From the IMG/VR virus record IMGVR_UViG_3300024252_000004, positions 248,001 through 312,000 of that record: DNA of 64,000 bases; one strand, written 5' to 3'. The notes beneath the pieces were generated by a model, which ran no database searches, was not told the origin of the DNA, and saw nothing but the letters and a program-made list of their open reading frames with translations. Position numbers and translations under genes: made by a program. Shown piece after piece: positions 61,698-61,874 of the stretch; position 1 is the stretch's first letter, and each line of letters opens with the position of its first letter.

Positions 61698-61783
61698 GGG
61701 GGTATCAGGTCTGTTTCAGACCGATTCCGGGCGGCCCACACGATCAGTGGGACGGGTGAGAGGATTGCTCACTGCCCCCGCCA
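61698..61783 (+). ncRNA. 86-nt atypical tRNA-like RNA, twin A
   Basis: GGGGGTA/TGCCCCC acceptor, G-CCA end, T-like arm GTGAG-AGGATTG-CTCAC. Confidence 0.7.
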
Positions 61784-61788
61784 GTTTT

Positions 61789-61874
61789 GGGAATATATAG
61801 GCCAAGGTACAACGGCCGCTTTCAAAGCAGTATTCATGATATCTGCGCAGGAGAATTACCTGCTATTCCCGCCA
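61789..61874 (+). ncRNA. 86-nt atypical tRNA-like RNA, twin B
   Basis: GGGAATA/TATTCCC acceptor, G-CCA end, T-like arm GCAGG-AGAATTA-CCTGC. Confidence 0.7.

What the first reader, a model, noticed from the sequence alone, without database searches (positions are those of the whole stretch)
61698..61874. Twin 86-nt CCA-ending tRNA-like RNAs with a shared non-canonical T-loop
Seen: two tandem elements with little primary identity but the same length, a 7-bp acceptor, G73-CCA, and a 5-bp arm with loop AG(G/A)AUU(G/A) in place of UUCRAAU. Both have no variable nucleotides and an interrupted anticodon-like arm (loops containing GAT and CAT). Structure conserved without sequence indicates selection. 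I cannot assign them to a known tRNA class; CCA-ending non-tRNA species are known from T4-type tRNA clusters.
Basis: partly seen in the sequence, partly recalled or inferred. Interest (0 to 1): 0.75.

Follow-up and report, generated by a model that had tools for sequence, protein, structure and literature searches.

The report
Anticodon-less tRNA-like RNAs in phage
Two adjacent 86-nt genes in a marine jumbo phage's tRNA cluster belong to a previously undescribed, covariation-supported family of CCA-ending RNAs that keep a tRNA's acceptor arm but have no conserved anticodon and a different "T-loop", so they are tRNA look-alikes that cannot decode and whose function is still unknown.

Summary
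E1 (61698-61783) and E2 (61789-61874) are each 86 nt. Each has a 7-bp acceptor, G73-CCA, and a 5-bp arm with loop AGGAUUG or AGAAUUA. ARAGORN and Rfam 15 call neither, even at E<=10 on a 184-nt query.

They are real RNA genes. I found four more independent members: one in a syntenic relative (L112) and three in unrelated marine phage contigs (L123, L141, L162/L171). All lie inside tRNA clusters, on the tRNA strand, 2-12 nt from a tRNA where adjacent. Across six sequences 98.4% of pair cells are standard pairs and 17 of 25 pairs show double compensatory changes (0/500 shuffles). An unguided MAFFT+RNAalifold run recovers the same helices.

The AGRAUUR loop, G1-C72, G2-C71, A7-U66, U8 and G73-CCA are conserved. 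The "anticodon" hairpin is not: its loop is 3-8 nt and often a tetraloop. GAU and CAU are therefore incidental and these RNAs cannot decode.

The family is absent from 40 terminase relatives, deposited phages, 185,579 prokaryote species genomes and T4 rnaC/rnaD. The tandem twin is specific to this phage.

Function is inferred only: most likely a tRNA top-half mimic, possibly tRNA-Ser-like. Expression could not be tested.

The parts
61698..61783 (+). E1: 86-nt anticodon-less tRNA-like RNA gene, a typical family member
   Evidence: Family model R3 scores it 79.2 bits. An orthologue in the syntenic contig L112 scores 59.9 bits with the E1-only model. MFE fold.
61698..61704 (+). E1 acceptor stem, 5' strand (pairs with 61773-61779)
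   Evidence: 7 bp. In the family, 4 of 7 pairs show double compensatory changes and 100% of cells are paired.
61705..61707 (+). E1 connector UCA (U8 invariant; C9 and A10 in 5 of 6 members)
   Evidence: Alignment A6.
61708..61722 (+). E1 hairpin H1: 6-bp stem with a 3-nt loop, at the position of a D arm but without a D loop
   Evidence: 4 of 6 pairs have compensatory changes. RNAalifold predicts it independently.
61723..61731 (+). E1 single-stranded linker, GAUUCCG (GAAUCCG in L112, L123 and L141)
   Evidence: Conserved in sequence in 4 of 6 members.
61732..61754 (+). E1 hairpin H2: irregular and variable.
   Evidence: A hairpin is present in all members, but sequence, length and loop (3-8 nt) are not conserved.
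61756..61772 (+). E1 T-position arm: 5-bp stem GUGAG/CUCAC with the conserved 7-nt loop AGGAUUG
   Evidence: 3 of 5 stem pairs covary. The loop is AGRAUUR in all 6 members.
61773..61783 (+). E1 acceptor 3' strand, then G73 and the encoded CCA
   Evidence: C71, C72, G73 and CCA are invariant in the family.
61789..61874 (+). E2: 86-nt divergent paralogue. It has the same acceptor/T-arm/G73-CCA frame and loop AGAAUUA. It differs in having connector UAUA, an H1 of 4 bp with a 10-nt loop containing GG, and a different linker.
   Evidence: The E1-only model scores it 27.5 bits, E 5e-4. R3 scores it 62.5 bits, but E2 was part of R3's training set. No orthologue was found.
61847..61874 (+). E2 T-position arm (GCAGG-AGAAUUA-CCUGC), acceptor 3' strand, G73-CCA

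Best explanation
E1 and E2 are genes for small stable RNAs of a new family of tRNA-like RNAs that lack an anticodon.

Shown:
- The family has a conserved four-helix fold: a 7-bp acceptor; a 6-bp hairpin with a 3-4-nt loop where the D arm would be; a variable irregular hairpin that directly abuts the next arm; and a 5-bp arm with the invariant-type loop AGRAUUR.
- G1-C72, G2-C71, A7-U66, U8 and G73-CCA are invariant.
- It occurs only inside tRNA clusters of marine phages, on the tRNA strand, a few nucleotides from neighbouring tRNAs or ORFs.

Inferred:
- The RNAs are transcribed in the tRNA polycistron and matured like tRNAs (RNase P at G1, trimming to the encoded CCA).
- Because no anticodon loop is conserved and the canonical T-loop and D-loop elbow contacts are missing, they do not decode on the ribosome.
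- They instead act through the acceptor/T-arm 'top half' with G73-CCA, as a mimic of tRNA shape.

The most likely specific reading is a mimic of tRNA-Ser. The acceptor (G1-C72, G2-C71, R3-Y70) and G73 resemble tRNA-Ser. The variable hairpin sits 0-1 nt from the T stem, as a serine-type long variable arm does. Such an RNA could be bound by proteins that read acceptor end plus variable arm and ignore the anticodon. Those include seryl-tRNA synthetase and host toxins of the AbiEii/MenT nucleotidyltransferase type that modify the CCA end. The RNA would then serve the phage as a decoy or competitor, or as a chargeable non-ribosomal acceptor. E2 is a lineage-specific diverged duplicate of E1.
For: Real gene family:
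- Six sequences from five independent contigs.
- 98.4% of pair cells are standard pairs; 17/25 pairs have double changes; 0/500 shuffles reach this; slid-partner controls give 33-51%.
- The same helices come from unguided MAFFT+RNAalifold, with 12 compensatory pairs.
- R3 scores are bimodal: members 76-82 bits, everything else <=26 bits.
- The element moves as a discrete module. It lies upstream of the 143-aa ORF in L112 and downstream of it in the window.

tRNA-cluster context. There is no + strand terminator within the block.

Not decoding:
- H2 loops differ in size and sequence among members.
- No tRNA or tRNA-Sec hit even at E<=10 on queries of 184 nt and 91 nt.
- The loop AGRAUUR has no U54...A58 arrangement (read directly from the sequence).

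tRNA-Ser-like reading:
- Acceptor and G73.
- In L162 the element lies 2 nt after tRNA-Ser(GCU) and has an identical T stem, GUGGG/CCCAC.
- That tRNA-Ser is the best-scoring bona fide tRNA for R3 (22 bits), though other non-member pattern hits score as high or higher (up to 26.4 bits).
- SerRS needs the V arm plus G73 and not the anticodon (PMC5389517).

The phage invests heavily in tRNA maintenance: two CCA-adding-type NTases, RNA-ligase-like genes, two class IIb aaRS, a tmRNA, and an RNA ligase in L123's tRNA cluster.
Against: - No expression, processing or charging data. No RNA run was listed, and the DNA contigs gave no variants.
- The tRNA-Ser analogy rests on position and a few nucleotides. 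Sequence similarity to tRNA-Ser is weak, and the element is not simply tRNA-Ser minus its anticodon arm: H1, the linker and H2 have different sizes.
- H2 could equally be called a degenerate anticodon arm.
- Nothing explains why the AGRAUUR loop and the GAAUCCG linker are conserved. I found no consistent loop-linker or loop-loop pairing across all members.
- No host, no host toxin and no phage SerRS were identified.
- The patchy distribution (absent from 40 terminase relatives) shows the RNA is dispensable for this phage clade.
Confidence: 0.45

Rival explanations
1. Processing punctuation. The elements exist mainly as RNase P and 3'-trimming signals that cut the long tRNA/ORF polycistron into units, as in the mitochondrial tRNA punctuation model or the mascRNA type. 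The released small RNA would have no function of its own.
For: Tight packing between an ORF stop (61691), E1, E2, E3 and the next ORF start (62011). No internal + strand terminator. Only the acceptor/T-arm half, the minimal RNase P / CCA-enzyme substrate, is strongly conserved.
Against: A cleavage signal does not need an encoded, invariant G73-CCA, an invariant-type 7-nt loop AGRAUUR, or a conserved linker GAAUCCG. Ordinary tRNAs abound in the same clusters and already provide such signals. Two signals in tandem, 5 nt apart, would be redundant.
Confidence: 0.2
2. Chargeable non-ribosomal amino-acid carrier. The RNA is aminoacylated by an anticodon-independent synthetase and donates the amino acid to a non-ribosomal acceptor, by analogy with the non-proteinogenic tRNA-Gly of staphylococci, whose T arm is altered (own knowledge).
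For: Invariant G73-CCA and first two acceptor pairs. No anticodon, so it would be kept off the ribosome. The altered T-loop parallels cell-wall tRNAs (own knowledge). In L123 and L141 the next gene is a peptidoglycan amidase. The phage encodes its own aaRS genes.
Against: No tRNA-dependent transferase (Fem, L/F-transferase, CDPS, PEARL type) was seen next to any member. The amidase is an ordinary endolysin. The phage's aaRS are class IIb enzymes that normally read the anticodon. No charging data.
Confidence: 0.12
3. Decaying tRNA pseudogenes. These would be relics of duplicated tRNA genes (for example tRNA-Ser) that lost their anticodon arm and T-loop and have no function.
For: Patchy distribution. 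E2 has no orthologue. HNH homing endonucleases and rearrangements occur in these clusters. L112:2626-2716 looks like degenerate RNA-like sequence.
Against: Pseudogenes do not keep 98% pairing through 17 compensatory pairs, an invariant-type non-canonical loop and G73-CCA across phages that share almost no proteins.
Confidence: 0.06
4. Genuine decoding tRNAs of aberrant structure. E1 would read Ile codons (GAU) and E2 Met/Ile codons (CAU). Alternatively E2 would be a UCA (opal/Sec-type) tRNA through the alternative arm at positions 27-43, loop UUUCAAA.
For: E2's H2 loop UUCAUGA has U33 and R37. E2 positions 27-43 can be drawn as a 5-bp stem (one C.A mismatch) with a perfect Y-U-UCA-A-A loop, followed by a 15-nt variable region (my reading). 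The phage carries other odd tRNAs.
Against: Orthologues have tetraloops or 3- and 8-nt loops at that place. E1's loop has C33 and C37. The UCA alternative destroys the stable H1 and leaves no D stem. The tRNA and tRNA-Sec models give nothing at E<=10. ARAGORN finds nothing.
Confidence: 0.04
5. tRNA-like primer for reverse transcription or replication, annealing through its 3' 14-18 nt.
For: A CCA-ending acceptor/T-arm is what retroelements use as a primer (own knowledge).
Against: The genome contains no complement of the 3'-terminal 18 nt of E1 or E2 within 2 mismatches, and only chance-level 14-mers. No reverse transcriptase was seen near any member.
Confidence: 0.02

Closest known systems
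Canonical tRNA (Rfam RF00005), especially class II tRNA-Ser
   Same: 7-bp acceptor directly stacked on a 5-bp arm with a 7-nt loop; U8; N73-CCA; four helices; location and strand inside a tRNA cluster. The G1-C72/G2-C71/R3-Y70/G73 acceptor resembles tRNA-Ser. A hairpin lies 0-1 nt from the T stem, like a serine-type variable arm.
   Different: No conserved anticodon loop. T-loop AGRAUUR instead of UUCRANY (no U54/A58). D arm replaced by a 6-bp hairpin with a 3-4-nt loop and no G18G19 (except E2). A 7-9-nt linker lies between H1 and H2. No hit to the tRNA model even at E<=10.
Phage T4 stable RNAs species 1 and 2 (rnaC, rnaD) in the T4 tRNA cluster
   Same: Small non-tRNA RNAs of unknown function, encoded on the tRNA strand right next to tRNA genes of a large phage.
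   Different: Longer (139 and 119 nt). rnaC has a canonical GGGUUCGAAUCCC T arm. Neither has a fully encoded CCA as annotated. The family model R3 gives no hit to either. They are analogous in context, not homologous.
tRNA-Sec / allo-tRNAs (Mukai et al., PMC5389517)
   Same: G73; serine-type identity logic that does not use the anticodon; found in phage tRNA clusters too. The 6-bp stem with a roughly 4-nt loop at the D position resembles the tRNA-Sec D arm (own knowledge).
   Different: Those have 8/5, 9/4, 8/4 or 9/3 acceptor/T configurations, a real anticodon arm, a canonical T-loop, and they decode. This family is 7/5 with no anticodon arm.
Non-decoding tRNA mimics (B. cereus tRNA-Other, YrlA Y-RNA-like tRNA module, tmRNA tRNA-like domain, plant-virus TLS, mascRNA)
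   Same: They use tRNA shape, especially the acceptor/T-arm half, for a purpose other than decoding.
   Different: None shares the AGRAUUR loop or this helix layout. The tmRNA TLD has G3:U70/A73. YrlA and tmRNA have canonical T-loops. There is no Rfam match to any of them.

Membership tests
tRNA (RF00005) | Scores at or above the Rfam gathering threshold (29 bits), or is called by ARAGORN | tested here: not met
   No tRNA hit at gathering, or at E<=10 on 1.8 kb, 184 nt or 91 nt of L162. ARAGORN finds 36 tRNAs in the window but nothing at 61698-61874.
tRNA (RF00005) | 7-bp acceptor + 5-bp T stem + N73-CCA | tested here: met
   Covariation in both stems.
tRNA (RF00005) | T-loop motif (U54...A58, Psi55-C56; consensus UUCRANY) | tested here: not met
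   The loop is AGGAUUG, AGAAUUG or AGAAUUA in all 6 members.
tRNA (RF00005) | 7-nt anticodon loop with U33 and R37, conserved among orthologues | tested here: not met
   H2 loops: ACGAUCA (E1), UGCG (L112), 8 nt (L123), tetraloop (L141), 3 nt (L162), UUCAUGA (E2).
tRNA (RF00005) | Aminoacylation and ribosomal decoding | not testable with these tools
   No RNA run was listed. Needs wet-lab assays.
T4 rnaC / rnaD stable RNAs | Sequence/structure homology to T4 species 1 or 2 RNA | tested here: not met
   R3 with filters off on the T4 tRNA region: the best hits are ordinary tRNAs at <=14.7 bits and there is none on rnaC or rnaD. The folds differ.
T4 rnaC / rnaD stable RNAs | Non-tRNA small RNA gene embedded in a phage tRNA cluster, on the tRNA strand | tested here: met
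tRNA-Sec / allo-tRNA | 12/13-bp acceptor branch split 8/5, 9/4, 8/4 or 9/3, plus an anticodon arm and a long V arm | tested here: not met
   The split is 7/5 in all members. There is no anticodon arm. No RF01852 hit.
tmRNA tRNA-like domain | G3:U70 and A73 (alanine identity), canonical T arm | tested here: not met
   Pair 3:70 is G-C or A-U, and 73 is G. The neighbouring E3 and X105, not E1/E2, have G3:U70/A73.
New family defined here (model R3) | GGNNNUA-UCA-H1(6 bp)-GAAUCCG-H2(variable)-GNNNG-AGRAUUR-CNNNC-UANNNCC-G-CCA; R3 score well above background | tested here: met
   E1 79.2 bits, other members 76-82 bits, background <=26 bits. E2 meets the acceptor, T-arm and CCA parts but deviates in the connector, H1 and linker. 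Its independent score is 27.5 bits with the E1-only model.

The most novel reading that the evidence does not exclude
The family is an anticodon-less mimic of tRNA-Ser that phages deploy in the tRNA arms race. It presents a serine-type variable arm plus a G73-CCA end to proteins that ignore the anticodon. It would thereby soak up host abortive-infection toxins that modify or damage tRNA 3' ends (AbiEii/MenT-type nucleotidyltransferases), or hijack SerRS, without disturbing decoding. It would be the first tRNA-shaped RNA decoy against a tRNA-targeting defence.
Probability: 0.18. Interest if true: 0.85.

Novelty: new variant of a known kind. Interest (0 to 1): 0.62.

Why it matters
Phage tRNA clusters are usually read as codon-usage or anti-defence "spare tRNA" sets, and gene finders silently skip anything that fails the tRNA model. 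This work shows a conserved, covarying RNA family that keeps only the acceptor/T-arm half of a tRNA plus an encoded G73-CCA. It replaces the T-loop with a different conserved loop and has no anticodon, so it cannot be an adaptor. That makes it a clean natural test case for what a tRNA "top half" can do on its own in an infected cell: processing, CCA metabolism, charging, or acting as a decoy for acceptor-end toxins. The same phage also carries a second odd family (E3/X105), tRNAs with long variable arms for Ile, Met, Asn and Lys, two of its own class IIb synthetases, two CCA-type nucleotidyltransferases, RNA ligases and a tmRNA. Marine jumbo phages therefore appear to remodel the tRNA system far more than current annotation shows. 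The covariance model built here allows a systematic survey.

Tried and rejected
- Near and distant BLAST of the RNA block and of other members against 50,697 deposited phages found nothing beyond generic T-arm fragments of E3.
- The strict 3' signature pattern in viral contigs, run twice, found only the phage's own near-identical contig.
- The 17-mer T arm in viral contigs gave five hits. All lack an acceptor and CCA. One is unrelated sequence and four are a different conserved element. That number of hits is about what chance predicts.
- The near-identical contig IMGVR_UViG_3300024243_000006 has 0-1 mismatches and is uninformative.
- PrkA-like kinase and topoisomerase I proved poor lineage markers. 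The terminase worked.
- 40 terminase relatives (62-73% identity, plus one near-identical partial record; including a 99%-complete 332-kb record) have no R1, R2 or R3 hit and only chance-level pattern hits. The prefilter of the genome search is lossy, since it missed the E1/E2 cross-hits that direct cmsearch finds.
- Homologues of the downstream ORF: only the phage's own protein. The 84%-identical upstream-ORF homologue P0122 had no retrievable DNA.
- The closest terminase contigs (P0003, P0004) extend only 27-50 kb upstream of the terminase, whereas the RNA block lies 84 kb upstream in this genome.
- Expression: no RNA run was listed. Laying contigs of four partial DNA holders gave identical fragments with no variants.
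- 37 pattern hits in bacterial and archaeal genomes all score <=23 bits with R3 and are not members.
- Primer idea: no primer-binding-site-like complement in the genome.
- Intramolecular pairing of the AGRAUUR loop with the GAAUCCG linker or with the H1 loop gives 3-4 pairs in some members but fails in L162, L141 and E2. I rejected it as unsupported (my inspection).
- Shine-Dalgarno-like reading of GGAG(A/G)A in the T stem and loop: it lies partly inside the stem and is weak in E1 and L112. Not pursued.
- L112:2626-2716 as a decayed E2: no R3 hit, and its fold is no better than shuffles.
- Complex prediction was not used, because it gives no verdict for RNA.

Full report
**1. The observation**

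The window is bases 248001-312000 of a 395,127-bp IMG/VR jumbo-phage record from seawater. All 36 ARAGORN tRNAs in the window lie on the + strand. The whole genome has 44 tRNAs and a tmRNA.

At the stated coordinates the sequence shows two 86-nt units, E1 (61698-61783) and E2 (61789-61874), 5 nt apart. Each has:
- a 7-bp acceptor;
- G73 and an encoded CCA;
- a 5-bp arm directly 5' of the acceptor 3' strand, with a 7-nt loop AGGAUUG (E1) or AGAAUUA (E2);
- a first hairpin where a D arm would be;
- a second, irregular hairpin that abuts the T-position arm.

MFE folding returns this four-helix shape for both. Identity is 35/86 overall. It is random-like (12/50) in the centre and 23/36 at the ends.

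A generic scanner for "7-bp acceptor + N-CCA + adjacent 5-bp/7-nt hairpin" finds 40 distinct + strand candidates in the genome, against 0-3 in shuffles (42 raw rows). E1 and E2 are the only + strand candidates whose loop is not UU-initial. ARAGORN and Rfam 15 do not call them, at gathering or at E<=10, even when given only 184 nt.

**2. Finding relatives**

Deposited phages hold nothing similar. The only IMG/VR hit to flanking ORFs or to strict RNA patterns is a near-identical contig.

The large terminase (GpA type, at the record's end) places the phage in a large aquatic jumbo-phage clade, with homologues at 64-89% identity on contigs up to 420 kb. I fetched 80 IMG/VR relatives. The 40 whole records I searched contain neither the 3' signature beyond chance nor any hit to single-sequence models of E1 (R1) or E2 (R2) or to the later family model R3.

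The ORF just upstream of E1 has a 76%-identical homologue on a 7.8-kb Logan contig, L112. L112 is syntenic with the window, with 46-79% amino-acid identity over 14 ORFs. It carries an E1 orthologue at L112:2084-2166 (R1 59.9 bits, E about 1e-12). There the element lies between tRNA-Asp and the ORF, on the other side of the ORF from its position in the window. So it behaves as a discrete module.

A scan of JGI metagenome contigs with the 3' signature shared by E1, E2 and the L112 copy gave 64 stretches. Filtering for a complementary T stem and a 7-bp acceptor partner left, apart from the phage's own record, four elements:
- L123:7473-7561(-), 89 nt;
- L141:1271-1354, 84 nt;
- L162:4252-4337 and the identical L171:6846-6931, 86 nt.

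These contigs are phage: they carry endolysins, RNR, HNH endonucleases and an RNA ligase. They share almost no proteins with the window's phage. Each element lies inside a tRNA array on the tRNA strand. In L141 and L162 it lies 2-8 nt from a tRNA, for example 2 nt after tRNA-Ser(GCU) in L162. In L123 the nearest tRNA is about 575 nt away.

**3. Structure and conservation**

In the six-sequence alignment A6, 98.4% of pair cells are standard pairs. 17 of 25 pairs show changes on both sides. 0 of 500 shuffles reach these values, and sliding the 3' partners by 1-3 columns drops pairing to 33-51%.

| Helix | Pairs with compensatory changes |
|---|---|
| Acceptor | 4 of 7 |
| H1 | 4 of 6 |
| T-position stem | 3 of 5 |

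Because A6 was fitted to a model, I repeated the analysis with plain MAFFT + RNAalifold. It predicts the acceptor, H1, an H2 core and the T-position arm on its own, with 12 compensatory pairs.

Invariant or nearly invariant positions:
- G1-C72, G2-C71, U6, A7-U66, U8;
- C9-A10-G11 (5 of 6);
- the first and last T-stem pairs (G-C);
- the loop A-G-R-A-U-U-R;
- G73-C-C-A.

The linker after H1 is GAAUCCG in three members and GAUUCCG in E1.

H2 is a hairpin everywhere but is not conserved in sequence, length or loop. The loop is 7 nt in E1 and E2, the tetraloop UGCG in L112, a tetraloop in L141, 3 nt in L162 and 8 nt in L123.

R3 scores are cleanly bimodal. Members score 76-82 bits and E1 79.2. All other pattern-selected loci score <=26 bits, including the 37 from a scan of 185,579 bacterial and archaeal species genomes.

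**4. E2 and the "twin" arrangement**

E2 shares the frame: acceptor GGGAAUA, loop AGAAUUA as in L162, and G73-CCA. It is found by the E1-only model at 27.5 bits (E 5e-4), and the E2-only model finds E1 and the L112 copy at 24-26 bits.

It deviates in three places. The connector is UAUA instead of UCA. H1 is a 4-bp stem with a 10-nt GG-containing loop. The linker is different.

No orthologue of E2 was found. L112 has one copy, and the stretch at the equivalent place (L112:2626-2716) is not a member. The other contigs show one copy each in the part I could see. The tandem pair is therefore a lineage-specific duplication, not a property of the family. The equal length of 86 nt is partly coincidental, since members range from 83 to 89 nt.

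**5. What it is not**

It is not a canonical tRNA, for the following reasons:
- no model hit;
- no T-loop motif;
- no D-loop, except E2's GG;
- no conserved anticodon loop.

An alternative drawing of E2 has a UCA anticodon arm at positions 27-43, but it destroys H1, lacks a D stem and has no counterpart in any other member.

It is not related to T4 rnaC or rnaD. R3 with filters off scores only ordinary T4 tRNAs (<=14.7 bits). rnaC has a canonical T arm, and neither has a fully encoded CCA.

It is not a tmRNA-like domain, because it has no G3:U70 or A73. It is not tRNA-Sec or allo-tRNA, because the split is 7/5 and there is no anticodon arm.

It is not a primer with a genomic binding site. It is not coding: it moves independently of ORFs, the overlapping ORFs of 58 and 44 aa are mechanical, and its conservation pattern is RNA-like.

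**6. How it most likely works**

Shown: this is a conserved, structured, CCA-encoding RNA gene family embedded in phage tRNA operons.

Inferred from context: it is co-transcribed with tRNAs and ORFs, since there is no + strand terminator in the block and spacers are 5-14 nt. It is matured by the tRNA machinery.

[quoted passage not shown] What is lost is what the ribosome and most synthetases need.

The acceptor (G1-C72, G2-C71, R3-Y70) with G73 is serine-like. H2 sits 0-1 nt from the T stem, which is the geometry of a serine-type long variable arm. In L162 the element follows tRNA-Ser and has the same T stem.

SerRS relies on the variable arm and G73 rather than the anticodon (PMC5389517). 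The toxin MenT3 belongs to the DUF1814 superfamily that also includes the abortive-infection toxin AbiEii (abstract of bioRxiv 10.64898/2026.01.19.700257). It prefers tRNA-Ser through the length and orientation of that arm and extends the CCA end (PMC11541572).

The phage itself encodes two CCA-type nucleotidyltransferases, RNA-ligase-like proteins, two class IIb synthetases and a tmRNA. It is clearly invested in protecting or remodelling the tRNA pool.

I therefore favour a tRNA top-half mimic, possibly a tRNA-Ser mimic, acting as a decoy, competitor or alternative substrate. This is inference only. Nothing here explains the conserved AGRAUUR loop or the linker, and I found no consistent tertiary pairing for them.

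The rivals, with my weights, are listed in the report sections: processing punctuation, chargeable non-ribosomal carrier, pseudogene, aberrant decoding tRNA, and primer.

**7. Novelty and verdict**

The kind of thing is known: non-decoding tRNA-like RNAs, and stable non-tRNA RNAs in phage tRNA clusters. This family, its architecture and its conserved loop are not in Rfam 15. I did not find them described in the paper searches I ran.

I rate it a new variant of a known kind, with moderate to high interest. It is limited by the lack of expression data, by a small number of members (five independent lineages plus E2), and by an unproven function.

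Noticed in passing
window 61889-61994 (E3), window 45817-45921 (X105), L112:2717-2823: A second odd family lies right after the twins. These are CCA-ending RNAs of about 105-107 nt with an alanine-type acceptor (G3:U70, A73), a canonical T arm, an internal extra T-arm-like hairpin (CUGG-UUCGAGU-CCAG in E3), and a shared CGCGCGU..GA motif just before the T arm. ARAGORN and Rfam do not call them. The L112 orthologue of E3 shows compensatory changes in an internal stem (GGGUGG/CUACCC versus GGAUA/UAUCC).
   Followed up: partly
window 35325-35415, 41294-41386, 47135-47221, 48464-48554; also L141:802-885, L123:9101-9186: tRNAs whose anticodon families normally have a short variable region are drawn with long variable arms: Ile-GAU 91 nt, Met-CAU 93 nt, Asn-GUU 87 nt, Lys-CUU 91 nt. 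Each has a normal-length sibling in the cluster. Unusually long tRNAs (Lys-CUU 84 nt, Gln-CUG 86 nt) also occur in the unrelated phage contigs; their structures were not drawn, so long arms are presumed there.
   Followed up: partly
window 7713-9140 and 24232-25716: Two phage-encoded class IIb aminoacyl-tRNA synthetases (D/K/N type, with the OB anticodon-binding domain) lie in the same region as the long-arm Asn and Lys tRNAs. They may form the phage's own synthetase/tRNA pairs.
   Followed up: no
window 4239-4332: A 94-nt tRNA-Ser(UGA) with a long variable arm and G73-CCA, missed by both ARAGORN and Rfam.
   Followed up: partly
window 54460-54537: A tRNA with anticodon CUA (amber suppressor; ARAGORN labels it 'Pyl' from the anticodon alone). 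I did not examine whether the phage recodes TAG.
   Followed up: no
window 62214-62273: A perfect 30-nt tandem duplication (10 codons) at the 3' end of the 88-aa ORF 62011-62277, which directly follows E3. This ORF is absent from L112.
   Followed up: no
window 45921-46433 (- strand); L141:129-662(-); L162:3008-3532(-): An HNH homing-endonuclease ORF on the opposite strand, conserved (47-53% identity) immediately beside tRNA-Ala(UGC) in three otherwise unrelated phage contigs. This suggests a homing element associated with that tRNA gene.
   Followed up: partly
genome 200710-201102 and 390054-390422; window about 10982-11533; genome 320712-321179; genome 325213-325615: A tRNA maintenance toolkit: two PolyA_pol/CCA-adding-type nucleotidyltransferases, two RNA-ligase-like ORFs and a phage tmRNA. 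The window also holds NAMPT, NUDIX, phosphomannomutase and an ATP-grasp gene.
   Followed up: no
L114:3331-3347, L115:9624-9640, L116:713-729, L117:1932-1948: Four viral contigs share a conserved non-coding-looking stretch of about 140 nt. It contains the same 17-nt hairpin GUGAG-AGAAUUG-CUCAC as the family's T-position arm, but has no acceptor or CCA. It is probably an unrelated structured element.
   Followed up: no
L141:674-748: A tRNA-Ala(UGC) with a non-canonical T-loop, AGCGAAG.
   Followed up: no
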